The notes: generated from the letters alone by a model not told the origin. Shown: positions 5,716 through 59,020, numbered from the stretch's first letter. The stretch: DNA of 64,000 bases from Octopus bimaculoides (GCF_001194135.2 NC_068981.1:120892071-120956070), one strand, 5' to 3'. Program-made: numbers and translations.

Positions 5716-5925
5716 TTTCACAGGGATTTAACTACCAAGTAGCATTCCAGAAAACACAAGTACCGAGATTCCTTGGCTTGAGTGATGATGATGACGATGA
5801 CGATGACGATGATACAATTCCGTCTCGGTCAGGTTTTCACAGTTGGGGTCAGGGCCGGCGTCTTGGCGAGGAAGCAGACAACGAAGAATCTCATCGGGAA
5901 GAACACGATGGCCAAGAAGTCCAAA
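5716..5925 (+). CDS. Coding exon A of SHP/BC-box/LRR gene (phase 1-1)
   Basis: Acceptor ttttgtccag, donor A|gtaagt. Reads SQGFNYQVAFQKTQVPRFLGLSD10TIPSRSGFHSWGQGRRLGEEADNEESHREEHDGQEVQ, with SHP-like WGQGRRLG. An alternative in-frame acceptor at 5724 is possible. Confidence 0.8.
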
Positions 5926-6614
5926 GTAAGTTTTGATGGTCTCTTAATGAACCTGTATATTCACCTCATCTATACACTGCACACTGCTAGATTCAGTCTT
6001 GATGTTTACAACCTTCATGTTTACATCAAAATTTGTATTATATTACATTAGTTATCTGAATTACATTCTCTAGTTTCATGCATATGAAGATATTTTTTCT
6101 TTCATGTCTGGTATTCTTGTAATGTATTGTTACTGTTAGTTTGTGGTTAAGTGCAATACATGTGTTTTACTTTATGATTTTCTTTCTATTGATGTAAACA
6201 TCCAAGTTCTGATGTAAACATGTGAAATGCAATGAAAAATCTCAACTGTCCAAATAATAGATTTCAATGTGATGCACAGTCACTCTGTCTTTTGCTACAT
6301 CTGTACCATTCAACATTGGTCCTATCCAAGTCCTGCTAAAGCTCATACTAATGACCATATCTTCTCTATAATCTCCCATGCCACACATAAAATGCACTTG
6401 TGCTGGTGATTTGTAAAAGCCCCCAACACACTATGTAAACTGGTTGGCATTATGAAGGGCATCCAGCCATAGAAACAATGCCAAAACAGATAATTGGGGC
6501 CTGGACAGCTCTCTGGTTGGTCAAATCCTGTCAAACTATTCAATCCATGCCAGCATGGAAAATGGATGTTAAACGATGATGATGATAACAGACAAAACAC
6601 AACACAGTGCAGAT

Positions 6615-7085
6615 AAGTATTTACTTAAGCCCTTTGCTCCCTATGGGGCATAAGCCATTGATAAGCTTTCTCCACTGTTCTTGACTCCAGTTCATCTTAT
6701 CTGCTTCTCTCCAGTTGGGGCCCTGCCTTAACCTTGCAGCTTCCTTAGAGATTTTGCTGCATAATGCTATATTTCCTTGAGGGAAGGCCTTCTTCTCCCA
6801 GGTCTTGCTGGTTTTGAATTATCATTAATGCATCTGTAGCTTCACTTTGTTTCTAAGTAAGGATTTTACTCCTTGCAAACCCATTTTTCCTTTGAGGAAG
6901 AGGTAGTTCATATATTCGTCTGGAGAGAAGCAGATAAGATGAACTGGAGTCAAGAACCCTAACCCTAACCCTTTGACCTGTCAAGCATAGAGACCCTATC
7001 AGGAGCTTGTGCTCTGCTGGTATAGCTCTCAGCGTAATTGTAGCATACTACACAAGCCACCATCTTGCAACAAGGGCTGGATCAC
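6615..7085. mobile_element. Decayed retroelement UTR-like fragment with a perfect 38-bp inverted duplication and (AACCCT)3
   Basis: 6677-6714 is the exact reverse complement of 6920-6957; AACCCT x3 at 6955-6972. Element class is recalled only loosely. Confidence 0.55.
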
Positions 7086-7171
7086 ATGCTGTATTGTAGA
7101 CAAATGCTGGTGACTAATGGCATCAGTATACTCAGAACACTAGCCTCAATCCATATGGAGTTCACAAAAGT

Positions 7172-7555
7172 ATCATCATCATTTAACATCTGTTTTCCAT
7201 GCTGGCATGGGTTGGATGGTTTGATAGGAACTGATAAGGCATCAGGTTTCATAGTCTGTTTTGGCCTGGTTTCTATGTCTGTATGCCCTTTCTAATGTCA
7301 ATGACTTCACAAAGTGTACTGGGTACCTTTTAAGTGGCATCAGCACCAGTGCTTTTTACGTAGCACTTTGGTTTTAGGATTTCAATTCTGTTGTGGTGGA
7401 CAGGTCTTCTCAAGTACAGCAATGCCCCACATATCTCTGTCCTCTGTCATCACCTTTGTAAGGTTCAGCGTTTTGAGATCAGCTTTCAAAACTTCATCCT
7501 TGGGTCTCCCTCTTCCACAACTTCCCTCCACTTTAAGCGATCAGCACTTCTATAA
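7172..7555 (-). mobile_element. 5'-truncated RTE LINE 3' end
   Basis: (CAT)n tail, shared 3'UTR, and minus-strand ORF end (VEGSCGRGRPKDEVLKADLK-like). Confidence 0.8.
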
Positions 7556-8340
7556 CTCTGACTACAAATTGTCTAGCTCAACCAACATACATATGCGTAT
7601 GTTTGTGTGTGTGCATGTTGTATGACTGCTTTTGTATCTGTGTATGCAAGAGACGAGGATAACCACCAATCTCAGATGTACAGTGATACTTCAGGTGGAG
7701 ACTGTAGTTTTTGGTAGTCTAGTTGGTAGCAGACACGTTGCTTTAGTTTGATAGTATGCGAGGTAGTTGAAGTGTTACCTAGATTTGGTAGTATAAACAA
7801 TAGTGGGAGTTTTGTTAAACTATGATAATTTTTGCAGTATGGGTGGTTGTAGAGGTGTTGTGTAGGCTTGACAGGTTTTTTTTTTTTGTACATGTAGATT
7901 TCATTAGTATAGGAGGTCATATCAGTTTTATGTAGGTTTAATAATTCATAATAGTATGGGTGATAGTAGAGATGTTGTAGTAATTTTTGTAGCTTCCAGT
8001 TGTGTGGTTTGTAGTGGCAGTGTTGTGTAGATTTTGTGAGTTACTTGGTGACCTCACAAGTGCTGTTGATACAGAAAAAAAGCACCTTGTACACAATGTA
8101 AATTGGTTGGCGTTAGGTATCCAGCCTAGAAACCATGCCAAAGTTGACATTTGAGCTCCATGTCACCATGTAGCTCACTCGATCCTGTCAAACCACTCAA
8201 TCCATATCAGCATGGAAAATGGGCGTTATATAATGATGTTGATGACGACAACAACAATGATGATGATGATGATGACGGTGATGTTGACAAGGCGGTAGGA
8301 TCACATTTGGGTAGATTTGATAATTTGTAATAGTACAAAT

Positions 8341-8632
8341 CGTTGCCAGTGCCGCTGGACTGGCTCTTGTGCAGGTGTCACGTAAAATACACCATTTTGA
8401 ACGTGGCTGTTGCCAGTACCGCCCGCCTGGCCTTTGTGCCGGTGGCACGTAAAAGCACCCACTACACTCTCGGCGTGGTTGGCATTAGGAAGAGCATCCA
8501 GCTGTGGAAACTCTGCCAAATCAGATTGGAGCCTGGTGTAGCCATCTGGTTCACCAGTCCCCAGTCAAATCGTCCAACCCATGCTAGCATAGAAAGCGGG
8601 CGTTAAACGATGATGATGATGATGATGATGAC
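8341..8632 (+). mobile_element. Young RTE 3'UTR copy with (GAT)n tail; related copies at ~6420-6590, 8050-8250, 10250-10480(-), 18745-19055, 19400-19680, 23535-23720(-), 55515-55720(-), 59110-59230, 62520-62735
   Basis: Conserved ccaacccatgctagcatggaaagcggacgttaaacgatgatgat terminus. Longer copies connect this UTR to the RTE ORF end. Confidence 0.85.
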
Positions 8633-9150
8633 AAGTAGTAGTACAGATGTAATAGTTTTTATAGTTTCCCGTAATGTCGTGTGTAGCAGCAGTGATGTAT
8701 AGGTTTGGTGTTAGTGGCAGCACAGTGTAAGGTTAAATGTGTTATGTATGATAACTATACTTGTCAGTGCAGTGATTGAATCTTGTTTTCTGGTTTCAAT
8801 TAGTAATAATATCTCTGTAGGTTAACTGATCATCTAGTAAACATAAATCATTTTGGATTATGTAATGAAATCAGATGAAAAATAGTCTTTGTTTGCAATT
8901 GAGTCATTACTCAAAAGTCTGTCTTCAAATGGCAAACATTTAAACAGTCTTTATTTTTATAAAAGTTATACTAACAAAATATGCTTTTGGATTTCTTTCT
9001 TTTTCTCTCTCTTTGTTTTATTTTGATTGGCAGGGTGAGGGGATGTTGTTATAAACCCTGTTATAATATCACTGTTTAATTGTCTTAATATTATCCAGAT
9101 ATGTTTATTTGAAATACTCTTTAATGGCTGAGCTCATCTCCAAATCGTGG

Positions 9151-9187
<37 letters not shown>

Positions 9188-9500
9188 AAAGTGTAAAAAC
9201 AAAAAGCAGTTAATGTGTTTACATTGTTAGTTCAATAGTTATTTCATCCTCTGCTACTATTCTTGGCTTGTATCAATAGTCTAAACTGCATGAAAATACC
9301 AGCCCGACATTCATCTTGTTCTGCGATCTGTGGTCTGCACACTCACTTCAGTACTACCTCAATGTCGTTAGCTGGAATTCTATAAAAGGCTAGTCAGTTT
9401 CTTGAAAGCGTGCCAAGGAAGATTATCTTTGTACAGTATTGGTAAACAATGTAATAGAGGAACTATGAAATATAATTTGCCAAAAGAATTCAAATTTGCT

Positions 9501-9544
<44 letters not shown>

Positions 9545-9717
9545 ATTATTATTATTATTATTTTTTTTTTTTCTTCTTCATTCTTTTTGCTTCTTTTATT
9601 TTCTCATCTGTCTGTAGTCTGTGGTGGCGATAGGCCAGGCTAGCTAAACTTGCTTAACCTAAGAACTTTATACATTTATCTTTAACTCTTTAAGATTGCC
9701 TGAATATCAAGCAACAA

Positions 9718-9755
<38 letters not shown>

Positions 9756-9812
9756 CAACATCATCATCGTTGTTGTCATCATTGTTATCATTTATTATTA
9801 TTTTTGTAATCA

Positions 9813-9843
<31 letters not shown>

Positions 9844-9870
9844 ATTATTATTATTATTATTATTATTATT

Positions 9871-10020
9871 GCATGATTTCACTGCATAGATGAGTGCAGT
9901 TCTGTGTGCCTTGGGTGTGTACTGTTTTGTTTCATTTGGTTTTTATGTTATTTAATTGTATAGAGAGTTGGGAGTAGTATTCTTTGTAATACATGCACAC
10001 TAGTGCTGTTTCCTGTATGA
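9871..10020 (-). mobile_element. R4/Dong-like LINE 3' remnant abutting a (TAT)n tract
   Basis: Similar to the 3' ends at 50116 and 50655 (tttcactgca..gtgccttg..); directly follows long ATT arrays. Confidence 0.5.
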
Positions 10021-10242
10021 AAGTGAAACAGTAGAATTTGGGATAACAGTGTAATGGCTTGCATCAGCAAAGAAAAAAAGAAAACACAATTAGAAAAAAA
10101 TTGTAAAGTGGAATAAATCATTTTGCAATGAGAAAGAAGACTCTGGCTGTAAGGTCTGTATGTTGTTTGAAAGGCACAAGTATGGATATGTGGTTATTGA
10201 GTTTACTTCATACTCATGTGATTTTTGGTTATCTTTCACTGT

Positions 10243-10273
<31 letters not shown>

Positions 10274-10838
10274 AGTGTCCATTGTCCATGTCATCATGGG
10301 TCGGACGGTTTGACCAGGGCTGGATAGCTGAGGGGCTGCACCAAGCTCCAGTCTGATTTGGCATGGATTCTTTGGCTGGATGCCATGCCTAACACCAACC
10401 ACTCTGAGAGTGTAAAGGGTGCTTTTACATGCCACCAGCACAGTTGTCAGTTGTGTGGCACCAGTATCTGCCACGACTACAATTTCACTTGGTTTGGTGG
10501 GTCATCATATTTTCTTATAATCTTTTATTATAGCTCCAGACTCAGCAATGCTTTGTGAGTGAAACTGGCAGATGGTTATTATACTAAAGCATATTGCCCA
10601 TGTGTGTATGCATGGGAGCTTTTTTTTTCCATGTGTCATCATACTGGCACAATTTGAGTGCCAGTAATGCCATGTTTATGTCACCTGTAAATGATATGTA
10701 CTGCAGTTTTATTGGGTTTTGGTACGTGAAAATAAGGGAAATAAAGTAATTTCCTTGAAAATAATTGAGTTTTGGTCACAGGAAGTACATCCTATTTTAG
10801 AATAAGGCCTGCTGAAGTCTAATCCAACCCATTCCAGC

Positions 10839-10900
10839 ATGGGTAAAAAGCAGAAAAATGAAGAAGGTGATGATGGTGATGATGATGATGATGATGAGGG

Positions 10901-10932
<32 letters not shown>

Positions 10933-11020
10933 GTGATGATGATGATGATAATGATGACGATGACGACAATGACAACAATGATGACAATGGCAACGACGAT
11001 GACAATGATGATGCGTATGT
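10839..11020 (+). repeat. Compound (GAT/GAC/AAT)n microsatellite grown from an RTE tail
   Basis: Preceded by RTE terminus ccaacccattccagcatgg. Confidence 0.85.
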
Positions 11021-11661
11021 TTAAGTCCTGATGTTTTAATTAAGCATTCCTCAGCATTTTTTCTTATCTTTCACAAGGCATCTATTATTATAAGAATTGT
11101 TTCTTTTTTTGTGGATGTTTCTATTTCCAGATCTTTACATTTGGATGGTTTCCCAAAGTCTTTCAGAGATGTGTTGGCAGTTTTTGAAATTAATATGCTA
11201 ATTAATAGACAGTTCTTTGTCTGTAGTCTGTGATAATAACGTCTTGGGGTTTCTTTATAATTTCTTTGGTGTCACCACCTTCATCAACAGGCATGGTAGG
11301 CTACAAGAAATTTTGCATTCCCTCACATCTGCCTCATAGGAGTGACTGCCAACCCTCACCTTCTTTCTTGCTATCCCTCTGTGTGTGATTATGTTGAAGT
11401 TTTTCTGAAACCTAAAATTATCAAGAGCTGGTATTGAGTTACATCAGGAATGTGTAGCATTTGGAATTAGTTTTAGATTCATATTTGATTACAGTAACTT
11501 AATGAGTTAAGGTCTTGGTATCTATATAAGTTCAGTGAAGCCATAGATAAGGACTGAAAGATTCCAGAGGAGTTGTTCTGACACAATGTCATGCAAGACT
11601 TTAACTGTATGTTTTTAAAGTGTAGAAAATCCATGCACTGAGCCTATCCCACTTTCTAAAC

Positions 11662-12009
11662 CAGGGGTTCTGTTTTATCTTCTGTTTTATCTCTGAACCC
11701 CTTTGATTACTATTTTATTCTGGTGGACCCCCCATAGCCATTCAGTGTTTAATGGCTCTGAAACGTCTTTCAAAATTCCTATTTTTTTTCCCGTATATAA
11801 ACTTGTGTAGGTTGAATTGTGTAAGACATTTGAGAAAGAAACCTAGCTGTTTCTTGTAATGCATACCAGTATATACATACAAAACAAAATTTTTTCAGGG
11901 GCCCTTAAAATACTATTGTGGATCCCCAGTTTACTATTTTGTTGTGTAGACCCCCGAAAGTCTTATACATATGCTCAGGGGCCATATGGGCCCTGGTTGA
12001 GAACCATTG
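11662..12009. mobile_element. hAT (Charlie-like) MITE, copy 1
   Basis: Termini CAGGGGTTC / GAGAACCATTG; flanks ttctaaac and ttctaagt (6/8 TSD); homologous throughout to 41252-41592. Confidence 0.85.
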
Positions 12010-13949
12010 TTCTAAGTGAAGTAAACATTTGCCTATAAAGAACTAGTCTACATCACTGGATGCAAATGAAGTTGCAGGTGTTACCTCAGACTTTTCCTTC
12101 TCCAAGAGTGATGTCTAAACAAAGATCAGAGAGTCTCTAACTCTTGGCTATTGGATGACCATTGACTATACTGAGTTCATCCCATCATATGACAAGTTTT
12201 GTTTTAGGTCCTGCAGAGTGTCCAATGAAAACTACGTGCCTTACTAAGCATGGTTGGTAGTGTTGCTGGTTTAGTGATTAATGACCCAACCATGCAACAT
12301 GTACTAGGTTACATGTTATCAGTAACACAAAGTTACCTGATATAACATACATAGATATGTACATACATACACATAAATATAAGTATGCACATGCATGCTA
12401 CCCCTTATTGCATTAGTGCCCCTAGTGTGTGGTAGTGTTAATCGATCACTTATCTTAATTCTGCCATCTGGCTATTGAATGCCTTTAGTAGAACTTCCTT
12501 TAATAATCTGAGGGAAACTCAATATACTGATGTACTTATTCCTACTATAACAGCACTAGTTGTGATTTCTTTGTCCCTTTTATTACCTCACCAGTCTAAG
12601 ATCCCTACAAAAATATCACGAGCTCAGCCCTTCCTTTAACTAAACTGTACAAGAAAGAAAGGAAAGCTAAAGAAAAGAAAATGTTATGACACTGGTCATA
12701 TTATTCATTTAAAACATATAAAACATGATTTTGTATATATTATGCATTTAATACATTATACATGGTGAACTGATACAATTGTTAGCTTGTTGGACAAAAA
12801 TTCTTATCAGTAGTTTTCTGGATCTTTGTGTTCTTTGTTCAAATCCCTCCTTGGTCAACTTTATAATTTTTTACCTTTCTGGGTCAATGAAACCAAGTAT
12901 TATTGAAGTATTGAAACTGATGTAATTGACTTTCCCCTTTTCTACAAATGGTGACTTTGTGCCAGAATTTGAAGCAATTATACATTACATTTGATTCACC
13001 ATATTTTAAAATATGTTTTAGATATGATATTGTCTCTTATAAATGATTTAAAGAGAAGAAATTGTTACCAAATACAAGTCATACACACCTGAATAATGCT
13101 TTCACTACAGAATCAGGATGAATATTATGTTAGATGCGACATGTTTTAACAATGAAATAAGGATGGATATCAAATTAGATGCTATATCAGTGATTCCATT
13201 TGTGGTGGGGCATACACCTCATCAGCGGGACCGGCGAAGACTGCAGTGGGATGTGGGATCCAAAATTGTTTTCTGTTTTGTTTTTTAGTGGGACATGGAA
13301 TTGTGAAAATGTACTATGCCTTTACTCAGCCTAGCCAAACCAATCCCTCCAGCCAAGCATATTTTGTGAAGACCTATTTGTTAGTGTACAGTGGTATTTT
13401 AATGCCCTAATGTGAATAGGAAATTATTTGATTAATATTGATTTCAAATTTTGGCACCATTGTTCAACTGGTACTTAATTTATCAACCTCAAAAGGATGA
13501 AAGACAAAGTCAACCTTGGCAGAATTTGATATAATTATGAAATATTAAAAATAAGTTATTTTTTCCCAACCAGGCATTTTTCTTGAAAGTTATAGTGGGG
13601 GGCCTGGTGGAAAATATGTTGGAAAACATAGCACTACATGTTCTGACTACAAAATGAGGATAAATATCAAAACAGATGCTACATGTTCTAACTATAAAAT
13701 TAAGAAGGTCATTATATTAGGTGCTGCATGTTCTTATTAGATGCTTCAGGTTATGACTATTAAATAGGATGGATATCGAATGAAATGCTACATGTTCTAA
13801 TTTCCTACCACCCTGCACTACCATTAACGAAGCACTTGTGGTTTGCATAATGTCACAGCAGAAGAACTGCTGCATATGCAGGGTGGGTATTAGTTCAATC
13901 ATGAAATGGTCAATTGGTCATATAGCTGAGCTATGCCTCAACAGTAATA

Positions 13950-17509: not shown

Positions 17510-17752
17510 AAATATTGGTTTCAAATTTTGGTCAGAAATTTTGGGGGAGGGGTAGGGTAAGTTGATTACACTGACTCCAGTGTTCAACTGGTACTTATTT
17601 TATTGACTCCGAAAGAATGAAAGGCAAAGTTGTCCTCAGTGGGATTTGAGCTCAGAACACAAAGACAGACGAAAAGCTGTTAAGCATTTTGCTTGGCGTG
17701 CTAACAATTCTGCTAGTTTGCCACTTTAATAATAATAGTAATAATAATAATG

Positions 17753-17791
<39 letters not shown>

Positions 17792-18012
17792 GTATTAATC
17801 CTTTCTACTGAAGGCTCAAGGCCTGAAATTTTTAGGCAGGGGTGACTAGTTGATTACATTGAGCCTACTGTTCAACTGATACTTATTTTATTGACCCCCA
17901 AAAAGATGTAAGGGAAAGTTAACCTTGGTGAAATTTGAGCTCAGAATGGGAAAATGGATGAAATGCCGCTAAGTATTTTGCCTGGTGTGCTAATGATTCT
18001 GTTAGCTCACTT
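17510..18012 (-). mobile_element. Two tandem Nin/Deu-like SINEs separated by (AAT)n
   Basis: Two ~210-bp copies of the same consensus in head-to-tail arrangement. Confidence 0.85.
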
Positions 18013-24129: not shown

Positions 24130-25012
24130 TATGTGGGGTGTTGAAAAGTTCCTGGCTTTAAGGGTATCATGAAANNNNNNNNNNNNNNNNNNNNNNNNNN
24201 NNNNNNNNNNNNNNNNNNNNNNNNNNNNNNNNNNNNNNNNNNNNNNNNNNNNNNNNNNNNNNNNNNNNNNNNNNNNNNNNNNNNNNNNNNNNNNNNNNNN
24301 NNNNNNNNNNNNNNNNNNNNNNNNNNNNNNNNNNNNNNNNNNNNNNNNNNNNNNNNNNNNNNNNNNNNNNNNNNNNNNNNNNNNNNNNNNNNNNNNNNNN
24401 NNNNNNNNNNNNNNNNNNNNNNNNNNNNNNNNNNNNNNNNNNNNNNNNNNNNNNNNNNNNNNNNNNNNNNNNNNNNNNNNNNNNNNNNNNNNNNNNNNNN
24501 NNNNNNNNNNNNNNNNNNNNNNNNNNNNNNNNNNNNNNNNNNNNNNNNNNNNNNNNNNNNNNNNNNNNNNNNNNNNNNNNNNNNNNNNNNNNNNNNNNNN
24601 NNNNNNNNNNNNNNNNNNNNNNNNNNNNNNNNNNNNNNNNNNNNNNNNNNNNNNNNNNNNNNNNNNNNNNNNNNNNNNNNNNNNNNNNNNNNNNNNNNNN
24701 NNNNNNNNNNNNNNNNNCTTACTGGCCGCATCTCTGTACATGGCTCGCACAGCTCTCACTAGCCATTCTTCTATCCCAAGTTTCCTCATTGACCACCAGA
24801 TAAGGGATCGGGGGACCCTGTCAAAGGCTTTCTCCATGTCAACGAAAGCCAGGTACAGAGGTTTATCCTTGGCTAGGTATTTCTCTTGCAACTGTCTCAC
24901 TAGAAATAAGGCGTGAATCTGAGAGGGGGATATGTTGAATAAAATCATAATTAACTGATCCTCCTGTATTTTCTTTTACCCGAAGCCAGCAACATTTCAG
25001 CACCCCCTTGTA
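24130..25012. mobile_element. mariner-derived MITE interrupted by an RTE insertion and a gap
   Basis: Left TA-tgtggggtgttgaaaagttcctggcttt and right aagccagcaacatttcagcacccccttg-TA are imperfect inverted repeats. Confidence 0.7.
24718..24912 (-). mobile_element. RTE RT fragment nested in the mariner MITE
   Basis: Reads ALFLVRQLQEKYLAKDKPLYLAFVDMEKAFDRVPRSLIWWSMRKLGIEEWLVRAVRAMYRDAASK. Confidence 0.92.
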
Positions 25013-25212: not shown

Positions 25213-25296
25213 ATTTGGAACCAGAAATACATGATGATGAGGAACTCTATGAGTTGCAAGATGATGGCTTACTACATCCTGTTGAGGCCTTTCCCG
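25213..25296 (+). CDS. Coding exon B (84 nt, phase 1-1)
   Basis: Acceptor cctcttttcag, donor G|gtaagt. Reads (N)LEPEIHDDEELYELQDDGLLHPVEAFP; acidic, in frame with A and C. Confidence 0.8.
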
Positions 25297-25394
25297 GTAA
25301 GTTTGTTACTTTTTGAATCATTTGTTGTATTTCTTTTGAGCATGCATCAGTGCTGCTGCCACTGCTGCTGCTACTCCTTTTCTACATACTGAGC

Positions 25395-38667: not shown

Positions 38668-38995
38668 TGGCTGCTGCAAACACCCGTCATGAACATCAAT
38701 CCAGAAGTCGGAGCCCCTCTTCACAGCAGCGACACCATCATCATCAACAGCAACAACAACACCAGCACCATCATCATCGTCATCATCATCATCATCATCA
38801 TTATAGTCCGTCGGTGCCCTCTTTGGCACAGTTATGTCTTCAATACATTGCTGCACACTTCCTGAATCCGAAGGAGCACACTGTACCTTTACATGGCTTG
38901 TCAGAACAGCCAGCTCAAGCTCTTTTGGATTACTTACGAAAGGAAAAGCTCTTGAAGCCGCGAACATTTAGAATTTTACATGCATTTTTGCCTTG
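38668..38995 (+). CDS. Coding exon D (328 nt, phase 1-2): His/Gln tract plus BC-box/Cul2-box-like helix region
   Basis: Acceptor tttctcttccag, donor TG|gttagt. Reads (V)AAANTRHEHQSRSRSPSSQQRHHHHQQQQQHQHHHHRHHHHHHHYSPSVPSLAQLCLQYIAAHFLNPKEHTVPLHGLSEQPAQALLDYLRKEKLLKPRTFRILHAFLP. Confidence 0.9.
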
Positions 38996-41937: not shown

Positions 41938-42003
41938 TCAACTGCAGAAATTGTGTTTTGACTCCTATGCATATGTCACTAATGAATTATTATATGAAAT
42001 AAG
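41938..42003 (+). CDS. Coding exon E (66 nt, phase 2-2), first LRR-like unit
   Basis: Long polypyrimidine tract ending tttgcag, donor AG|gtatgt. Reads (C)QLQKLCFDSYAYVTNELLYEI. Confidence 0.9.
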
Positions 42004-42889: not shown

Positions 42890-43345
42890 GTGGCAAGCTG
42901 GCAAAATTGTTGGCATGCTGGATGAAAATGCTTAGCAGTATTTTGCCTGTCGCTACGTTCTGGGTTCAAATTCCGCTGAGGTTGACTTTGCCTTTCATCC
43001 TTTCGGGGTCGCTAAAATAAGTACCAGTTGAACATTGGGGTTGATGTGTTCGACTCTTCCCCACCTCCCCCAAGCTGCCCTTGTGGCAAAAAACAAAAAA
43101 AATATTGAAATAATTATCATTAAGGTGGTGATTTAGCAGAATCATTAGTATGCTAGGTGAAATGCTTAGTGGTATTTCATCTGTCTTCACATTCTGAGTT
43201 CAAAGTCTGCCAAAGTCGACTTCACCTTTCATCCTTTCGGAGTCATTAAATTAAATACTAGTGAAACAAAAACACTAGGGTTGATGTCATCGATTAGTCC
43301 TCTTCCCACAAATTTCAGGCCTTATACCTATAGTAGAAAGGATTA
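42890..43345 (+). mobile_element. Two tandem Nin/Deu-like SINEs (further copies at 46210-46420(-), 47240-47460(-), 49845-50060(+))
   Basis: Head ggcaagctggcaaaattgttggca..gttcaaattcc; core gcctttcatcctttcggggtc. Confidence 0.85.
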
Positions 43346-51065: not shown

Positions 51066-52329
51066 AAGACGTTTTGGTGGGTATACTTATACTGCTTTTT
51101 TTCTGCTGTTTTTTCATCATGCTGGCTCAACATCCAGTGTATGTAAGTCCTGACTCTGCCATATCTGAATATATTCCTTCTAATTCAAGGATGGTCAACC
51201 AGAGACAATATAATTTATTTGTTTCTTGCCCATCACCACATATTCTGCAGCTACTTATTGTAGCTTTATTATATATCTTTTTGATGGAGGAGATTTTGAC
51301 TTTGTGTTACAGTTATGAACCTTTCAGTCTCTGCTTTGAGTCCCAAGCTTCTCAACCAGTTTTTTAGATTTAGCTTGGTTTCTTTTCTGTTTAGCTTATC
51401 CCTGTATTTCTATCATTTTATCATGACATTTTGTAGTTCAAATTTTAGCTTAAATTTTAGCTGCTTTACAGCTTTTGTTCTTTCATTTTCTTCATATTTG
51501 TTGGGTATTTTGACCTCTTTCTTGAAGACAGACAGCCATTTTTTGTTTCGCTCATGCTTTGTCGTTATTTGTATCAGTTTTCCTTGATATTGAAGTAGAT
51601 GTTTCTTTAGCTCTCTTTCTATAATAGTTTTCTAGTTGTGGTAAGACCTCAACCACCTTCAATTCATTATATATATATAACCTTTCTATGTCAGATTTTG
51701 GGTGGTGTATACTAGTTAATTTAGTTTCCAGTTAAGAATATGGTATCTGTAGCTCGGAATTAGGACAGCTAGAGTATTGATGTCTGTTATCTTATTTTTG
51801 GCACTTAGCTTTGTTTTAAGTATTCATCTAATTCATCTGTAATATTTGTTCCTTATCTTTTCATTTATTTGTGCATGCTGTACCCCACCTAGTTCATTCA
51901 TTCCTAAGTAAATATTTGCTTGAGTTTGGTCCAGTTCACATATTTCATTTTCTTAATCTAGTGCAATATTGTTGCTCTTAATTAGCCTCCCTCTTTTCAA
52001 TTTGCTTTGGCACATTTTTCTAAGCAGAATCTTATATTGATTTCTTTGGTAAATCTGTGCACTGTCTATGGTGAAGTTGTTGTTATTATTATTAGATGAA
52101 TGTCTTCCTTATAAGGAGAACTGCATTATTGTCATTATAGTCCAACCCTTGCTAACATGGAAAACAGACGTTTGATGATGATGATGTTGATGTATATTTA
52201 TATTTCATGCTCTTTTAATATTTTCAGTTACTCATTCGATTTTCTATGTACCTCCCCACCACTTTATGTGCATTTTTATAATTATTTTCTTCATTTGTCC
52301 TTGTGGAATCATCATCATCATCTACAAAA

Positions 52330-53000
52330 AGTTGGCAGAATTGTTAGCATGCTGGGCAAAATGCTTAGTGGCATTTCATTTGTCTTCATGTTCTGCATTG
52401 AAATTCTGCTCAGGTTGACTTTGCCTTTCATCCTTTCATGGGCAATAAAATAAGTACCAGTTGAGTACTGGGTTGATGCAATTGACTTACATCCTCCTCA
52501 AAATTACTAGCCTCGTGTCAAAATTTGAAATCATCATTATTACTATTATTATCATTAGTGATGGCAGATTCGTTAGCATGCTGGACAAAATGCTTAGCGG
52601 TATTTTGCCTGTTGCTATGTTCTGAGTTCAAATTCCATTGAGGTCAACTTTGCCTTTCTTCTTTTCGGGGTCGGTAAAATAAGTGCCAGTGAAACACTGG
52701 GGTTGATGTAATTGACTAGTCCTCTCCCCAACAAAATTTCAGGCCTTGTGCCTATAGTAGAAAAGATTATTATTATTCACTATTTGGCGGCGAGCTGATG
52801 GAATCATTGGCACGCTGGATAGTAGTGGTATTTTGCCTGTCGGTCCATTCTGAGTTCAGATTCTACCAAGGTTGACTTTGTCTTTCATCCTTTCGGTGTC
52901 AATAAATTAACTACCAGTTGAATACAGGGGTTGATGTAATCAACTCATCCCCTCCCTCAAAACTAGTGCCCTTGTGGAAAAATTTGAAACCATTATTTCT
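52330..53000 (+). mobile_element. Three head-to-tail Nin/Deu-like SINEs just upstream of exon F
   Basis: Three ~210-bp copies, each ending in (ATT)n. Confidence 0.88.
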
Positions 53001-53010
53001 ATTATTATTA

Positions 53011-53047
<37 letters not shown>

Positions 53048-53125
53048 TATTATTTGTTTTGATTCTGAATTTTGAAAATTCTATTAATTTTTCTGTTTTC
53101 ATTTTGTGTTTTCACATCTCCACAG

Positions 53126-53202
53126 GATGCATACTAACTTAGTACACCTGAGTCTCAACTCATGTAGTTTAATAACAGACAGTGGTTTACAGCCTCTTAC
53201 AG
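53126..53202 (+). CDS. Coding exon F (77 nt, phase 2-1), cysteine-containing LRR
   Basis: Acceptor ctccacag, donor AG|gtaagc. Reads (R)MHTNLVHLSLNSCSLITDSGLQPLT, matching LxxLxLxxCxxITDxGL. Confidence 0.92.
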
Positions 53203-53464
53203 GTAAGCAAGCATTTTGATATCACATTTGTTAGAGTAACTTTTGTTGTTTAACCCCAGAGCTGTCCTGGTTATGCAGGCATATGATGAAAGGTGTCCCA
53301 GCTGTGATCATCCTGTCATTCTGTCAAGCACACATCATGTAAATTGTCTTTCCTTTTTAATAAGAGAAGGTAGAATGTGATTTGAAGGAAAGTTGATTAT
53401 TTTTTCGAGGGTCAGTGATTACATAAAAGCTTCATGTTCTTTGGCTTGGATGATAGACACAAAA

Positions 53465-54146
53465 ATTTCCTGTTTGCTTCTGTCTAGAAATCAAAGGAAA
53501 TGACTACTACTCCCTACAATTTAGCTTTTGTGACCTAGACTTCAATGTTTTGAAACTGAACTATTTCCATTACATTTCAGACAAATATTCTGTTCAGTAC
53601 CACAGATTTGCTTGTCAGTTGCTTGACCTTAACAACTTAAGCATATCCCTTAATGGCAGACAATATGTGCATCTCTGATGATGATCTTTAGTCAGAGCGT
53701 GTCTCAACCAGAAATGTTGATTCTATTACATGTCTTTCAAAGACATTGCACTCATAACACTGTGTAGCATGATTTTTGTCCTTAAGTAACTCCTGTTATT
53801 TCCTTCAAACTTTGCTTTTGTTACATTTATTCAAACCTCAAACAATCTCAACACATGGATATGACACTCCCTCACAACTCCTGCTCATCATCAGAGATGC
53901 ACATATTGCCAGTCACTAAGGGATATGCTCGAGTTGTTAAGGTCAAGCAACTGACAAGCCGACCTGTGGTACTGAACAGAATATTTGCTTTAGCAATATT
54001 TCTGCTTCAACAACTTAGCGTTGAATCTGTGTGAAATGTAATGGAAATAGTTCAGTTTCAAAACATTGAAGTCTAGGTCACAAAAGCAAAGTTTGTAGGG
54101 AGTAGTAGTCATTTCCTTTGGTTTCTAGACGAAGCAAACAGGAAAT
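53465..54146. repeat. Long inverted repeat (arms 53465-53684 and 53885-54146, ~200-bp spacer)
   Basis: atttcctgtttgcttc..caaaggaaatgactactactccctac.. pairs with ..gtagggagtagtagtcatttcctttg..gaagcaaacaggaaat; inner arm halves derive from the 570-bp repeat. Confidence 0.9.
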
Positions 54147-55168
54147 AACTCTTACTGACCAAAGACAAAATAGAAAAAATAAGATTTTGCTACACAATGT
54201 AATTAGCTGCTGCCTTGAATTGTCATTAATGTTCTACCTTCTTATACTATACAACATTGCTAAACATTGTGCAGTTCCACCCCTAGGAAGGAGTACCCTG
54301 GAAGGCATATAAAGAATATTTCTAATTCTGTATAGATTCTTAAATTCCAACGCAATAAATATTAGCCAAGTGGTTAAGAAGTGCGTTTTCCAACCAAATA
54401 GTTTTGTGTTCAGTCCCTCTGCATTGCAGCATGAGCAAAGGGTCTTCTGTTATTACCCTAAACTGAATGGTTTTGGTAGATGGAAACTTAAATATGTACC
54501 TTTCAATGTACTTGAATTTCCATTCTTTTACTCTCTCTCCTTCAAAAGTTTATAGCTTCACCTCATTCAATCCAAGTAATTTTAAGTTTTTAAAAATCGT
54601 TTATTGACACACTCATAAAAGTGCATGCAAGTACACATACGTATATGCACAGACACACACATTCACACACTCATGAACTTCTCCAATATATACACATACT
54701 TGCAGGTGTGGCCATGTAAAATCTTTTTTTGCATATTCGTAGTCTCCGACATCTAAAACGTAGGAATCTGAAAAGCTTTTTCCAAAAAATGAACTTTTCA
54801 AGGATAGGTGCGAAACTGCATTAGCCCCCACAATTGATTACATTCATTTAAAATCAAGGCCAGTTTTTGTTGGCGATGAGTGACTTGATTGAATTAGACC
54901 AGTATATCACTGGTACATATTTTTGTTAATCATATTCCCTTCTCTCATTCAGAAAGGATAACAAGCTAATTTATTTTGATAGGATTTGAGATGAGAATTT
55001 AGACTGACGGCATTGAATACTATTATACATTATATTCTGGTGATTTAGTGTCTTCCTCGTTGCTTTATGATGAAGAATTACTAATATTCTATTTAATTGA
55101 TTATTTAATTGGCAGAAGTCACAAAGTCACTCAAGGGCCAAGAGTTTTGCATACTAGTATTTAATCTG

Positions 55169-55216
<48 letters not shown>

Positions 55217-55486
55217 NNNNNNNNNNNNNNNNNNNNNNNNNNNNNNNNNNNNNNNNNNNNNNNNNNNNNNNNNNNNNNNNNNNNNNNNNNNNNNNNNNNN
55301 NNNNNNNNNNNNNNNNNNNNNNNNNNNNNNNNNNNNNNNNNNNNNNNNNNNNNNNNNNNNNNNNNNNNNNNNNNNNNNNNNNNNNNNNNNNNNNNNNNNN
55401 NNNNNNNNNNNNNNNNNNNNNNNNNNNNNNNNNNNNNNNNNNNNNNNNNNNNNNNNNNNNNNNNNNNNNNNNNNNNNNNNNNNNNN

Positions 55487-55519
<33 letters not shown>

Positions 55520-56296
55520 TCATCATCAGCCTTTAATGTCTGTTGGTCTATTTGACCAGAGCTGGAAAACAGAAGTTTCAATCTGACTTGGCTTGGTTTC
55601 TATGGCTGGATACCCTTCCTAACACCAACCACTTCACAGTGTGTGCTGGGTGCTTTTAACATGCCACCAGCATGAGTGCTTGCATGTGGCACTGACATGA
55701 ATGCTTTTTACATGGCACCATCACAGGACTCCTGTAGGTTAATCCTCTTCGCCAGGGGATGCAGCTTTAACACTTCTGCTGTGGAGGACAAGACATCTTG
55801 TGTACAGCAAGGTGCCAGGTATTTCCATCCTTTGTCATCTTGTCCAAATATATATATCGTTTTAATATTTCACTTGAGCATTGCACAACTAATAACCTGG
55901 TGTAGAACTCAGTATACATATGCTTCTGAACAAAGCTTTAGTCAAACACAGAATGTTAGTAAGAAAATGTGATGACAAGGGAATAAATGATTATCTTACG
56001 AACTTTATTAGCATTGAAGCCTCAAAGATGAAGTGCAATTTATTTCATATTGCACTTCATATTCGCGGCTCTATTGCAGCTATTAAGTATTACTAAGGCA
56101 CTCATTTATAAATCCAATGCATCTTATGCCAGAAACAGCTGTAAGCCAATGAAATTCATAAGATAATCATTCATTCTTTTGTCATCTCATTTTCTTATAT
56201 ATGCATACATACACACGTGTGTTTTGAGTTCTGTTTTCCTTTTTGTATTATCAAACCTGTCATTTTCTGTCTAATTATTTATTCATTTATTTCCAG

Positions 56297-56371
56297 CCTT
56301 AAAAAAACTAAAGACTTTAAAGTTAGGATCATGCCGGCAGCTAACAGACAACTGTTTAACACCTATATCGG
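56297..56371 (+). CDS. Coding exon G (75 nt, phase 1-1), one LRR
   Basis: Acceptor tttatttccag, donor G|gtaagc. Reads (A)LKKLKTLKLGSCRQLTDNCLTPIS. Confidence 0.92.
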
Positions 56372-56719
56372 GTAAGCAATTCTGTATATAGATTACGTAA
56401 CAAGATTACCTACTTCCATGATTATTATCTTTGTCGCTAGAAAAGAAACATTTTCAAAAGTTTACATCTATGTTACACTCTCATCAGTTTCATCATAATT
56501 GTTATCAAACATATTCATGGATGTGTAAGTAAAAACATTTGTTTCTAAACTCAAAGGAATAACACTTTTTTTGCACTTGGCCACTGACGCCTATGCTGTC
56601 TGGATAAGAGTGTTACTCCTAGTTAAGAACTAAATGTTTCTAATTCAGATCCAGTTCAGTAATATTATAAATCAAGTAATAAGACACTTGAGATTAAACT
56701 GAGTAGAATGTAGTATAGA

Positions 56720-57335
56720 TCATCATCATCATCATCATTTAATACCTGTTTTCCATGCTGGCATGGGTTGGATGTTTTGACTGGAACTGGCCAACCGGGG
56801 AGATTCCTAGGCTCTATTTGTCTGTTTTGGCATGGTTTCTATGACTGTATGTCCTTCCTAACACTAACCACTTCACAGGGTATACTGGGTGCTTATATAG
56901 TGACATTAGCACAAGTGCTTTTGATGTGGCACTGGCACAAGTGCTCTTACTGTGGCACTGGTACAGGTACTTTTTTATGTGGTACCAGAATAAGTGCTTT
57001 TCTATGTGGCACTTGCACTTGCGAGCCCACATGAAAAGACCTCTCAGCCGAGAGAGGGAGTGGGAGGCATGGCCTAAAGAACATGCCTATATCTATGTAT
57101 GGATGACCATGATTTTACATATCTTGATGTCTTCTCAAGCATAGCATATCGCCAGAAATCATAGTCCCTTGTCATTTCCTCTGTGAGGCTCAACATCTGA
57201 AGATCCTTTTTTTACGACTTCTTCCCATGGCTTCCTGGGTTTACCCCTTCCACAGGTTCCCTCCACAATTAGAGATCAGCACTTCTTTATGCTGCTGTCC
57301 TCATCCATATGCATCACATGTCCATACCAGTGCAG
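56720..57335 (-). mobile_element. 5'-truncated RTE LINE (~615 bp) with ~26-nt tandem array in the 3'UTR
   Basis: Minus frame reads LHWYGHVMHMDEDSSIKKC*SLIVEGTCGRGKPRKPWEEVVK..DLQMLSLTEEMTRD, then UTR and (GAT)n. Confidence 0.88.
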
Positions 57336-58199
57336 TAGATATCAGTATGAAAAGCACTACTGATCTCTCTTAGTAAGATTAATAGTTTGTAAAATTATAG
57401 TAGAATAGAACCTCACAGTACGAGTGCCCCATTGTACGAGTAATTAACTGTACAGTCTGAGACTTGCAGCATGAGCACACAAATCATTTGATCTTTAAGG
57501 TAATTCAGTTAATAAAACCAGTTTACATATTTCTTTTGCATTCTCTTTTTTATTATTGTCATTTTACTTGTAACTTTATCTTTTCTCTTTTAAAACCCAT
57601 AAAAAATAATTTTTGGGTGTGTTTGTATGGCTGGAATGGATTAATTATATTTTAGTTAATTTCAATGGGGAAAATTGATTTGTAAAATGAGTAAATTGTA
57701 AGATGGGCTTGGTCATGGAACAAATTAAACTCATACTGCGAGGTATCACTGTATTATTATTAATTCATCATTTACATTTCTTTTATGCAGTTTACAAATT
57801 AAGCAATTCTTTTTTTTTTATTTTGGTTAAGTAAGTCTTTCTGTATATTAGCGATAGTAATTGTGTTCATAAACAGCTTTTGTCTGTAAATCTGAGTATT
57901 GCCAGCAGAGAAAACATATAAGAACTGAGTTGATGGAGTATCAAATACACAACCAAGATGTTGTTATTGCTGTTGCAATGTGCCTTACTCAGCAGTAAAA
58001 CTTGATGGCTGTAAAATTTGAACTTATAACCATTTGGTCAGTAGTCCAGTATTTTAACCTCATAGATCTCGTCATTTGATTGTCTTATCAATGAATTAAA
58101 TTATAATTCATGATCATTTATTGCCATTCGTGGTCAGTTATGGTTATACTGATAAAACTGTCACTGATGAAGGAAAAAAATCCAGAAACACATGCATAG

Positions 58200-58233
<34 letters not shown>

Positions 58234-58858
58234 CAGGATATTTAGCCAATCCTTAAATAAAATTTATAAAAAATATTCTATCTTTAGTTTTTGCTTTTAA
58301 TCAGTCAAAATTACAATATTCTTTCTATTTCTCTTGAAAACAAATGTTTGCATGTGTATACACACACACACACACACACACACATATGCACACAGAAAAT
58401 ATTCAGCAACAATGAATTGAAGTTTGCTATGCATGCCAGATGATGGAGGTCTGTGACATGTGGCTGTACAGTGTGAGGCCTATTCAACTTATGAAAGAAC
58501 AGACATTGAATGATATTGTTGATGCTAATATGATTATGATGATGGTGGTTGTTGTTTTGTGGTGGTGATGAGGCTGATGATTGTGTGTGTGTGTGTGAAC
58601 AATAGCGATAGTATGGGGGTATGTGCTGTAACAAGTCATTGCATCCACCATTTGTTTGTGATTCCATATTCTTAGTGGATGATTCCTTTGCACCACTTCG
58701 CCAACAACCCTCCAACCCATGAGTCTGGTTGGCAAGTTGTTGCAGGTGAGGGTTTTACCAGTCTGGAATGAAAATTCTAACACAATACAAAATACACAAA
58801 TATTCTATGAGCTTTGTGGTAGTAATTCTTTTTTATTTTTTTTTTGTTCCCATTTCAG

Positions 58859-59020
58859 CTCTACAGTCTTTAGCCACCCTAGTACTGGAGAACACCCGGG
58901 TCACAGATGCTGGTATCATTCAGTATATCACTGACATCTCTATGCATCAGCCACCCACACTGAAGTGCCTAAATCTGAATAGAACATCTTGTACTCATAA
59001 GATATTTGGACCACTCACTG
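58859..59020 (+). CDS. Coding exon H (162 nt, phase 1-1), two LRRs; gene continues past the window
   Basis: Poly-T tract plus catttcag acceptor, donor G|gtatgt. Reads (A)LQSLATLVLENTRVTDAGIIQYITDISMHQPPTLKCLNLNRTSCTHKIFGPLT. Confidence 0.92.

What the first reader, a model, noticed from the sequence alone, without database searches (positions are those of the whole stretch)
5716..59020. Uncharacterised protein combining p97-binding SHP-like boxes, a BC/Cul2-box-like segment and LRRs
Seen: eight GT-AG exons splice into one open ~372-codon frame. It contains FHSWGQGRRLG and VFSGVGMRL, then PSLAQLCLQYI...LHGLSEQPAQALLDYL, then LRRs. Established: SHP boxes (F/W-x-G-x-G-x-x-L; Ufd1, p47, SPRTN, Derlin) bind the p97/VCP N-domain. 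[STP]LxxxCxxx[AILV] plus a downstream hydrophobic helix is the BC/Cul2 (VHL) box that precedes LRRs in CRL2 receptors such as ZYG11/ZER1. From memory the LRR part resembles an uncharacterised UBX-LRR family (zebrafish si:ch73-173p19.1-like); this is unverified. Inference: one protein may couple substrate recognition, CRL2 ubiquitylation and p97 extraction.
Basis: partly seen in the sequence, partly recalled or inferred. Interest (0 to 1): 0.8.

Follow-up and report, generated by a model that had tools for sequence, protein, structure and literature searches.

The report
Octopus UBX–SHP–BC-box–LRR gene fragment
The eight exons are the real middle part of an annotated but unstudied octopus gene whose protein combines a full set of p97/VCP-binding elements with a leucine-rich-repeat domain capped by a likely Elongin-C-docking helix, so one protein may both mark clients with ubiquitin and pass them to the p97 unfoldase.

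Summary
Eight AG/GT-bounded exons on the + strand join into 1116 nt (372 codons). The translation is an exact substring (residues 304-674) of RefSeq XP_052825883.1, "uncharacterized protein LOC106872789" of Octopus bimaculoides (967 aa). All 14 N gaps are intronic and no residue is missing. The gene runs off both window ends: UBA, coiled coil and UBX lie upstream, and 11 more LRRs lie downstream.

The family, named si:ch73-173p19.1 in fish, occurs from Capsaspora and Mortierellomycota fungi to cnidarians, molluscs, hemichordates and fishes. No paper in the library mentions it.

Both SHP boxes are conserved and lie in a predicted disordered linker after a UBX domain with the FPR loop, so p97 binding is well supported.

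The BC-box regular expression alone is worthless here, since 30% of shuffles match it. A profile of the three-helix cap, however, finds yeast Rad7's Elc1-binding SOCS box as its best PDB hit (E 1e-3) and the ZYG11B VHL box next. hhalign gives 90-93% probability for both.

The Cul2-box proline is absent in octopus, so the cullin partner is open. The coupling of a ligase receptor to p97 is plausible but untested.

The parts
5716..5925 (+). Exon 1 of the window fragment (XP_052825883.1 residues ~304-373). It encodes the linker after the UBX domain, a poly-Asp tract (5784-5813) and SHP box 1.
   Evidence: Acceptor ttgtccag|TT and donor CAAA|gtaagt. tblastn gives 97% identity to P0002 263-333. Exact match to P0070.
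5835..5867 (+). SHP box 1, FHSWGQGRRLG. This is the Derlin-1 type, H-x-W-G-x-G-x-x-L.
   Evidence: Conserved as HxWGxGxx[LM] in molluscs, Lingula, hemichordates and fishes. The best PDB match of the segment is Derlin-1 RHNWGQGFRLG (E 0.58, short). It lies in a region with pLDDT <50.
25213..25296 (+). Exon 2, an acidic linker (NLEPEIHDDEELYELQDDGLLHPVEAFP), on a contig island between two N gaps.
   Evidence: Strong acceptor and donor. Present in the RefSeq proteins and partly conserved in Argonauta.
34808..34921 (+). Exon 3, carrying SHP box 2 (FSGVGMRL, 34828-34851; Ufd1/p47 type F-x-G-x-G-x-x-L).
   Evidence: The second glycine is invariant in 18 orthologues. The site is F-x-G-x-G-x-x-L or H-x-W-G-x-G-x-x-L in invertebrates and fungi, and W-P-x-Q-G-N-R-L in vertebrates.
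38668..38995 (+). Exon 4. It encodes a short helix, a His/Gln-rich tract (38724-38801) and a three-helix cap: the BC-box-like helix SLAQLCLQYI (38820-38849), a second helix LSEQPAQALLDYLRK (38898-38942) and a third, FRILHAF (38967-38987).
   Evidence: AF2 predicts helices at P0002 452-464, 479-491 and 502-505. The cap profile hits Rad7 (5zb2) at E 1.1e-3, then ZYG11B. hhalign gives 90% and 93%. L of SL is invariant in 18/18 and the Cys position is C/A/S in 17/18. The donor TG|gttagt position is conserved: fragments from other species all end F[IV]PW.
41938..42003 (+). Exon 5, first LRR (LQKLCFDSYAYVTNELLYEI).
   Evidence: Phase-compatible AG/GT exon. 100% identity to P0002 510-531. Y, T and L are invariant in the family.
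53126..53202 (+). Exon 6, LRR 2 (NLVHLSLNSCSLITDSGLQPLT; CC-type).
   Evidence: Pfam LRR_6/LRR_4. FBXL2-like alignment.
56297..56371 (+). Exon 7, LRR 3 (LKKLKTLKLGSCRQLTDNCLTPIS).
58859..59020 (+). Exon 8, LRRs 4-5. It ends at a donor (CTG|gtatgt), so the gene continues beyond it.
   Evidence: A contig of another cephalopod aligns to the window only at 58853-59023. The next residues of the protein (ELPKLKVLLLEQT...) are not found in 59021-64000.

Best explanation
The finding is the central 372 codons of Octopus bimaculoides gene LOC106872789 (967-aa protein), a member of an old, unstudied opisthokont family.

Architecture, N to C terminus:
- UBA domain
- coiled coil
- UBX domain
- disordered acidic linker with two SHP boxes
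- His/Gln tract
- three-helix SOCS/VHL-box-like cap
- about 16 LRRs
- acidic tail

Most likely mechanism:
1. The UBX domain (FPR loop) and the two SHP boxes clamp the protein onto neighbouring N domains of a p97/VCP hexamer, as UBX plus two SHP boxes do in p47/Shp1. This step is inferred from conserved sequence and is strongly supported.
2. The UBA domain holds ubiquitin chains. Inferred.
3. The LRR solenoid binds a client. Inferred; the client is unknown.
4. The first cap helix (S-L-x-x-x-C, L491/C495 in the O. bimaculoides protein) docks into Elongin C and brings in a cullin-RING module, as the aligned helices of Rad7 and ZYG11B do. This rests on remote homology and is moderately supported. 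Which cullin is involved is unknown.

On this reading the protein would be a ligase substrate receptor with a built-in p97 adaptor. The client would be ubiquitylated and handed directly to the unfoldase.
For: Gene identity: exact match to XP_052825883.1. The eight junctions are shared with the O. sinensis and Argonauta models.

Family: full-length orthologues with the same architecture occur in chiton, bivalve, abalone, Lingula, two hemichordates, paddlefish, rays, syngnathids, a sea anemone, Capsaspora and Podila (E 1e-66 to 0).

UBX: Pfam 58.7 bits against a cutoff of 21. FPR is present in 15/18. Solved UBX domains of UBXN4, FAF1 and UBXN7 match at E 1e-11 to 1e-16.

SHP boxes: two matches are rare by chance (3.5e-5). 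Both are conserved across phyla, and the Ufd1-type and Derlin-type forms interchange at the same alignment position. Both lie in a predicted disordered linker. The glycine and hydrophobic positions are those that contact p97N in the Ufd1 SHP structure (PMC5042407).

Cap: a profile of the cap plus the first LRR finds Rad7 from the Rad7-Elc1 crystal (5zb2) at E 1.9e-6, and ZYG11B at E 0.02. The cap alone gives Rad7 at E 1.1e-3 as best of 177,635 PDB sequences, with ZYG11B second. The LRR part contributes nothing to this. hhalign gives 90.3% for Rad7 and 92.8% for ZYG11B.

Aligned residues: the aligned L and C match the spacing of the Rad7 SOCS-box mutant residues L168 and C172 (PMC4551923); I could not check Rad7 numbering directly. 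They also align with ZYG11B L18, which inserts into the Elongin C pocket (PMC13201589). Hydrophobic character is kept at the positions aligned with most ZYG11B contact residues (I21, L26, F50, V54, L58), but not at L19 (variable) and only partly at L23 (T in 6 of 18).
Against: - No binding was or could be tested here.
- The cap has no Pfam SOCS_box, VHL or F-box hit.
- The BC-box pattern is non-specific.
- In octopus the Cul2-box proline is Ser and the fifth position is Pro (LSEQPAQAL).
- In bony fishes the BC-box tenth position is Thr, and vertebrates have Ala or Ser at the Cys position (A is allowed by the consensus).
- ZYG11B E-values are not significant on their own in hmmsearch (0.02-0.3).
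- The isolated cap folds with low confidence (pLDDT 65), and Foldseek found nothing for it.
- SHP box 1 is absent in Actinia, Podila and Capsaspora.
Confidence: 0.5

Rival explanations
1. The protein is a p97 adaptor only. UBA, UBX and the SHP boxes work as described and the LRR domain selects clients. The three-helix segment is just the N-terminal cap of the LRR solenoid, inherited from an Elongin-C-binding ancestor, and no longer recruits any cullin ligase.
For: The p97-binding elements are the best-conserved linear features. The Cul2-box proline is lost in octopods, and the BC-box tenth position is Thr in bony fishes. There is no Pfam SOCS/VHL hit.
Against: The Leu that enters the Elongin C pocket in ZYG11B is invariant in 18/18. 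The S/T before it is kept in 18/18 and the small C/A/S position in 17/18, across about a billion years. The best PDB matches of the cap are exactly the two LRR proteins known to bind Elongin C through this helix.
Confidence: 0.35
2. The protein is a cullin-ligase receptor whose own turnover or exchange is driven by p97. The UBX and SHP elements recruit p97 to strip the receptor, or the whole ligase, from its site of action rather than to process the LRR-bound client.
For: The evidence is the same domain set as for the main explanation. From general knowledge, p97 with UBX adaptors is known to act on cullin-ligase complexes. UBXN7 docks on neddylated cullins (PMC3349548).
Against: Nothing in the sequence distinguishes this from the main explanation. 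It needs the same unproven Elongin C binding.
Confidence: 0.1
3. The finding is an artefact: chance motifs in a mis-spliced or mis-assembled chimera of two neighbouring genes, one encoding UBX and one encoding LRRs, joined across assembly gaps.
For: Older O. bimaculoides and O. vulgaris annotations do split the locus into a UBX model and an LRR model. Exon 2 lies on an island between gaps and next to retroelement fragments.
Against: The same single-protein architecture is predicted in 18 species from fungi to fishes, on gap-free chromosome-scale contigs. P0003 from another species carries UBA, the UBX end, an SHP box and the cap in one sequence. The old split models end by read-through at the exact exon boundaries. 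Exon phases all fit.
Confidence: 0.03

Closest known systems
p47/NSFL1C, Shp1 and p37 (UBA-SEP-UBX p97 adaptors)
   Same: They share a UBA domain, a UBX domain with the FPR loop and two SHP boxes in flexible linkers, giving multivalent binding to p97 N domains (PMC10641518).
   Different: The SEP domain is absent here. The SHP boxes lie after the UBX domain, and the client-binding module is a long LRR solenoid with a SOCS/VHL-like cap.
UBXN7/UBXD7 (UBA-UAS-UIM-UBX)
   Same: It is a UBA-UBX adaptor that physically links p97 to cullin-RING ligases, notably CUL2 (PMC3349548).
   Different: UBXN7 docks on NEDD8 of the cullin through a UIM and is not a substrate receptor. It has no BC box, SHP box or LRRs.
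Yeast Rad7 (SOCS-box LRR subunit of the Rad7-Rad16-Elc1-Cul3 ligase; PDB 5zb2)
   Same: Rad7 is the best solved match of the cap. An S-L-x-x-x-C helix, then L-G-G-[VI]-S...L..L.K...L, runs into CC-type LRRs. Mutation of that Leu and Cys abolishes ligase function (PMC4551923).
   Different: Rad7 has no UBA, UBX or SHP elements. Its LRR body is not specially close: it is not among the top 60 hits of the whole-protein profile. It pairs with Cul3 and Rad16.
ZYG11B/ZER1 (VHL-box-LRR-ARM receptors of CRL2)
   Same: An N-terminal BC-box helix is followed by a second helix and LRRs. hhalign gives 92.8%. The family's invariant Leu aligns with L18, which enters the Elongin C pocket (PMC13201589). There are weak sub-threshold Pfam LRR_Zer-1 hits.
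   Different: There is no ARM domain here. ZYG11B has a much longer loop between the helices. The octopus protein lacks the F-P of the ZYG11B cullin box. ZYG11B has no p97-binding elements.
UBXN1/SAKS1 and FAF1 (UBA-coiled coil-UBX)
   Same: The N-terminal half has the same order of UBA, long helix and UBX. FAF1 coiled coil plus UBX matches at E 9e-14. UniRef names for the split models are 'UBX domain-containing 1-like' and 'UBX domain-containing protein 4'.
   Different: Those proteins end at the UBX domain. Here about 700 further residues follow.
CRL2-LRR1 with p97-UFD1-NPL4 in replisome unloading
   Same: The logic is the same: a BC-box LRR receptor ubiquitylates a client, which p97 then extracts (PMC8682755).
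   Different: There the ligase receptor and the p97 adaptor are separate proteins. Here they would be one polypeptide.

Membership tests
UBX-domain p97/Cdc48 cofactors (UBA-UBX class) | UBX domain above the Pfam gathering score | tested here: met
   PF00789 scores 58.7 bits against a cutoff of 21 at P0002 179-253. AF2 gives a beta-grasp fold with pLDDT ~90. The domain is encoded upstream of the window.
UBX-domain p97/Cdc48 cofactors (UBA-UBX class) | Phe-Pro-Arg loop that inserts into the p97 N-domain cleft | tested here: met
   Octopus has FPRR. FPR is present in 15/18 orthologues, FPK in 2 and YPA in Capsaspora.
UBX-domain p97/Cdc48 cofactors (UBA-UBX class) | N-terminal UBA domain | tested here: met
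   MGFELED...AVEWL is present in the O. bimaculoides protein and O. sinensis isoform X1. In Argonauta, Pfam UBA_7 scores 27.6 bits against a cutoff of 27. O. sinensis isoform X2 lacks it.
UBX-domain p97/Cdc48 cofactors (UBA-UBX class) | Physical binding to p97/VCP | not testable with these tools
   This needs a pull-down or a complex model.
SHP box (binding site 1) p97 motif | Two glycines spaced G-x-G, an aromatic residue just upstream and Leu three residues downstream | tested here: met
   The two boxes are W-G-Q-G-R-R-L and F-S-G-V-G-M-R-L. The Ufd1 contact positions are given in PMC5042407. The Derlin-1 form is RHNWGQGFRLG.
SHP box (binding site 1) p97 motif | Conservation in orthologues | tested here: met
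   Box 1 is present in 13 of 18 (Mobula retains only the H-S-W start in this isoform). Box 2 is present in 11 of 18 in canonical form, with a variant W-P-x-Q-G-N-R-L in the six vertebrates. The second Gly of box 2 is invariant.
SHP box (binding site 1) p97 motif | Lies in an accessible, disordered segment | tested here: met
   P0002 residues 258-391 have pLDDT <50.
BC-box / VHL-box (Elongin BC-cullin substrate receptors) | BC box consensus (S,T,P)LXXX(C,S,A)XXX-phi (PMC4878042) | tested here: met
   Octopus has SLAQLCLQYI, and 14 of 18 orthologues fit. The pattern is non-specific, though: 30% of shuffles match and there are two other matches in this fragment.
BC-box / VHL-box (Elongin BC-cullin substrate receptors) | Homology to a box shown to bind Elongin C | tested here: met
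   Rad7 (5zb2) scores E 1.1e-3 with the cap alone and 1.9e-6 with the first LRR added. ZYG11B is next.
BC-box / VHL-box (Elongin BC-cullin substrate receptors) | Cul2 box phi-P-X-X-phi-X-X-X-phi downstream of the BC box | tested here: not met
   Octopus has L-S-E-Q-P-A-Q-A-L, with Ser for Pro and Pro at the fifth position. The consensus is met in chiton (VPEEVTQKI), Lingula, both hemichordates and Actinia.
BC-box / VHL-box (Elongin BC-cullin substrate receptors) | Match to the Pfam SOCS_box or VHL models | tested here: not met
   There is no such hit for the octopus cap or for 16 family caps at E up to 10.
BC-box / VHL-box (Elongin BC-cullin substrate receptors) | Binding of Elongin B/C and a cullin | not testable with these tools
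   No multimer prediction or experiment was available.
F-box/LRR (FBXL) proteins (name given to older split models) | F-box domain before the LRRs | tested here: not met
   There is no F-box hit in the fragment. F-box-like appears in 1 of 16 caps at E 0.03.
F-box/LRR (FBXL) proteins (name given to older split models) | CC-type LRRs (LxxLxLxxCxxITDxGL) | tested here: met
   FBXL2 is the best single-sequence PDB hit, at E 1.5e-12. AF2 predicts 16 repeats.
Rad7 orthologue | Overall orthology beyond the cap | tested here: inconclusive
   Similarity is concentrated in the cap. Rad7 is not among the top 60 PDB hits of the whole-protein profile. No full Rad7 sequence was at hand for a reciprocal test.

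The most novel reading that the evidence does not exclude
This family may be the first example of a cullin-RING substrate receptor and a p97/VCP adaptor fused in one polypeptide. The cap would dock on Elongin C, the LRRs would hold the client, and UBA, UBX and two SHP boxes would load the ubiquitylated client straight onto p97. The fusion would be ancient in opisthokonts (Capsaspora, early fungi, cnidarians, lophotrochozoans, hemichordates, fishes) and apparently lost in tetrapods, insects and nematodes. It would be 'Rosetta-stone' evidence for an ancestral Elongin-C-ligase to Cdc48 pathway related to the Rad7 ligase.
Probability: 0.4. Interest if true: 0.75.

Novelty: new variant of a known kind. 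Interest (0 to 1): 0.6.

Why it matters
p97 adaptors and cullin-ligase receptors are normally separate proteins. How ubiquitylated clients are passed from ligase to unfoldase is still worked out case by case, as with UBXN7 and CRL2, or CRL2-LRR1 and replisome unloading. A conserved natural fusion would give a compact system in which the hand-over is hard-wired. It can be tested in zebrafish, which has the gene, and in vitro.

The family also enlarges the set of UBX proteins beyond the 13 human ones. It shows a Derlin-type and a Ufd1-type SHP box swapping at one homologous site. It also gives Rad7's SOCS-box cap its first clear relatives in animals.

The practical limits are that mammals seem to lack the gene and that the client is unknown.

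Tried and rejected
- A first word-indexed protein search with a partial exon concatenate found only a 122-aa genomic fragment.
- The spliced protein could not be submitted to the exhaustive search. Using the contiguous exon-4 peptide instead worked.
- No upstream start exon and no downstream exon of this gene are in the window.
- Rfam found nothing in the window.
- Foldseek with the whole AF2 model returned only generic LRR proteins (Roco, ribonuclease inhibitor, internalins, FBXL2) and says nothing about the cap.
- AF2 of the isolated cap gave pLDDT 65, and Foldseek then gave no hit below E 2.7.
- Pfam has no model that matches the cap.
- hhalign against VHL aligns the BC box in register but without significance.
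- P0005, a 1920-aa FN3-repeat protein, was rejected as a spurious low-complexity hit.
- Literature searches for the fish gene name and for UBX plus LRR adaptors found no paper on the family.
- The artefact or chimera reading was considered and rejected on cross-species architecture.
- Absence from tetrapods, insects and nematodes is only 'not among 56 hits' of a capped search. It is not a proven loss.

Full report
**What is in the window**

Eight exons result:
- 5716-5925
- 25213-25296
- 34808-34921
- 38668-38995
- 41938-42003
- 53126-53202
- 56297-56371
- 58859-59020

Together they give 1116 nt, or 372 codons, with no stop. Intron phases are 1,1,1,2,2,1,1. The first exon begins at an acceptor and the last ends at a donor (CTG|gtatgt), so this is an internal fragment of a larger gene. 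All quoted peptides are at the stated coordinates.

**Gaps**

None of the exons contains N. All gaps lie in introns 1, 2, 3, 5 and 6, or downstream of the last exon. tblastn of the full-length protein found later covers residues 263-637 without a missing stretch, so no exon is hidden in a gap. Exon 2 sits on a 793-bp island between two gaps, next to reverse-transcriptase fragments on the other strand. Its order, strand and phase nevertheless agree with the independent protein model.

**Identity of the gene**

An exhaustive HMMER search with the contiguous exon-4 peptide (64 aa) found a 938-aa protein, 100% identical over the query. It is XP_036357550.1, "uncharacterized protein LOC115211563 isoform X2" of Octopus sinensis. 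Its 90% cluster holds the O. bimaculoides protein XP_052825883.1 (LOC106872789, 967 aa). My 371-aa translation is an exact substring of that protein, residues 304-674.

Older O. bimaculoides and O. vulgaris annotations split the locus into a "UBX domain-containing" model and an "F-box/LRR-like" model. The break falls exactly between exons 2 and 3, where the gaps are.

No residues 1-262 or 638-938 of the protein (P0002 numbering) are encoded in the window. UBA, coiled coil and UBX lie upstream, and 11 more LRRs lie downstream.

A contig from another cephalopod aligns to the window only at 58853-59023, which is exon 8. Fragments from other species all end at F[IV]PW, the read-through of the conserved phase-2 donor after exon 4.

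**The family**

A profile search returned full-length proteins of 840-1080 aa with the same architecture. Sources are Argonauta, a chiton, a freshwater mussel, an abalone, Lingula, two hemichordates, paddlefish, two rays, three syngnathid fishes (named si:ch73-173p19.1), a sea anemone, Capsaspora and two Podila (Mortierellomycota) species. All are "uncharacterized". Weaker hits are bacterial LRR proteins without UBX. No paper in the library mentions the fish gene name, and none describes a UBX-LRR p97 adaptor.

**Architecture**

Pfam finds UBX (58.7 bits, cutoff 21) and several LRR models. UBA_7 is found in orthologues that keep the first exon. AF2 with the 18-sequence alignment gives the following (P0002 numbering):
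- a long helix, 94-144
- a confident UBX fold, 179-254
- a disordered stretch, 258-391
- a helix, 391-411
- a disordered His/Gln tract
- three short helices, 452-464, 479-491 and 502-505
- a 16-repeat LRR solenoid, 513-890, with pLDDT >90

**p97-binding elements**

The UBX has the FPR loop: FPRR in octopus, and FPR in 15/18 orthologues.

SHP box 1 (FHSWGQGRRLG) is conserved as H-x-W-G-x-G-x-x-[LM] in molluscs, Lingula, hemichordates and fishes. It copies the Derlin-1 C-terminal SHP box, RHNWGQGFRLG.

SHP box 2 (FSGVGMRL) is Ufd1/p47-like. At the same alignment position, orthologues carry either F-x-G-x-G-x-x-L (bivalve, abalone, Podila) or H-x-W-G-x-G-x-x-L (chiton, Lingula, hemichordates, Actinia). 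Its second glycine is invariant in all 18.

Two such matches arise in only 3.5e-5 of shuffles of the fragment. The glycines and flanking hydrophobic residues are the ones that contact the p97 N domain in the Ufd1 SHP structure (PMC5042407). UBX plus two SHP boxes plus UBA is the p47/Shp1 solution for multivalent p97 binding (PMC10641518). I regard p97 binding as well supported, although it is not shown.

**The BC/Cul2-box question**

It matches in 30% of shuffles and three times in this fragment. The position and homology are evidence.

A profile of the cap plus the first LRR finds, as best hit in the PDB, yeast Rad7 from the Rad7-Elc1 crystal (5zb2, E 1.9e-6). The alignment starts at Rad7's S-V-S-S-L-Q-S-L-C helix. 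ZYG11B from CRL2 structures follows.

With the cap alone (62 columns), Rad7 is still first of 177,635 sequences (E 1.1e-3), and ZYG11B is second and third. The LRR part contributes nothing. hhalign gives 90.3% for Rad7 and 92.8% for ZYG11B, against 1% for the Skp2 F-box and 0.8% for VHL.

The family's invariant Leu and its C/A/S position align with ZYG11B L18, which inserts into the Elongin C pocket (PMC13201589). Their four-residue spacing also matches Rad7 L168 and C172, whose mutation kills the ligase (PMC4551923). I could not check Rad7 residue numbers directly. Positions aligned with other ZYG11B contact residues mostly stay hydrophobic.

Against this reading:
- There is no Pfam SOCS/VHL hit.
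- The Cul2-box consensus (PMC4878042) is met in chiton, Lingula, hemichordates and Actinia, but octopus has LSEQPAQAL.
- Rad7 uses Cul3.
- The isolated cap folds poorly, and Foldseek found nothing for it.

So an Elongin-C-docking helix is moderately likely. The cullin partner is open, and "CRL2" is not justified.

**Mechanism and rivals**

My best reading (0.5) is a ligase substrate receptor with a built-in p97 adaptor. The LRRs hold a client, the cap brings an Elongin C-cullin-RING module, UBA holds the chain, and UBX plus the SHP boxes load p97.

The main rival (0.35) is a p97 adaptor whose cap is only a structural relic. A variant (0.1) has p97 acting on the receptor itself. An artefact or chimera (0.03) is excluded by the conserved single-protein architecture across 18 species.

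**Novelty**

The gene is annotated, and its UBX and LRR domains are in the databases. I found no description of the two SHP boxes, of the Rad7/ZYG11B-type cap, or of the idea of a fused receptor-adaptor. It is a new variant of known kinds (UBA-UBX adaptors and BC-box LRR receptors). It would interest p97 and cullin specialists and is testable in zebrafish. It is apparently absent from mammals, but that rests only on a capped search.

Noticed in passing
24718-24948 (-) and 25318-25510 (-): Two reverse-transcriptase-like ORF fragments lie on the opposite strand and flank exon 2, on the small contig island between two N gaps. The first (FVDMEKAFDRVPR) gives Pfam RVT_1 at E 4e-4. The second (LKGLRVNLAKTK...PCSVCRKGV) ends about 20 bp from the exon's donor. 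They are not colinear, so they are probably two LINE remnants. They may explain the assembly gaps.
   Followed up: partly
63609-63954 (+): Frameshifted ORF pieces (…VCQQDPAPCHTSRRTQ…, …PLIIVWGAVE) look from memory like the C-terminal DDE region of a Tc1/mariner transposase. Pfam gave no hit.
   Followed up: partly
whole window, e.g. 17539-18001, 42893-43092, 52329-52784: The introns are packed with short interspersed repeats (38 segments with three or more self-matches) and with microsatellites. The eight exons have no self-match at all.
   Followed up: partly
5784-5813 and 38724-38801: There are two coding microsatellites: a run of ten Asp codons before SHP box 1, and a His/Gln tract before the cap. 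The His/Gln tract differs in length between O. bimaculoides, O. sinensis (one extra Asn) and Argonauta.
   Followed up: partly
locus as a whole (proteins P0067, P0068, P0071, P0073): Older O. bimaculoides and current O. vulgaris annotations split this gene into a 'UBX domain-containing' and an 'F-box/LRR-like' model. The UBX model ends by read-through of the exon-2 donor (…VEAFPGKFVTF), and the LRR model starts at the Met inside SHP box 2.
   Followed up: yes
alignment A3, region of SHP box 1 (Polyodon, Mobula, Narcine): Paddlefish and rays carry an extra, third W-G-x-G-x-x-L motif (SHSWGPGEFL, PRTWGRGELL, HRAWGRGQAL) about 55-65 residues upstream of SHP box 1.
   Followed up: no
The 'L.G..P.....LL' element may therefore be a general entry motif of CC-type LRR domains rather than a cullin box.
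   Followed up: no
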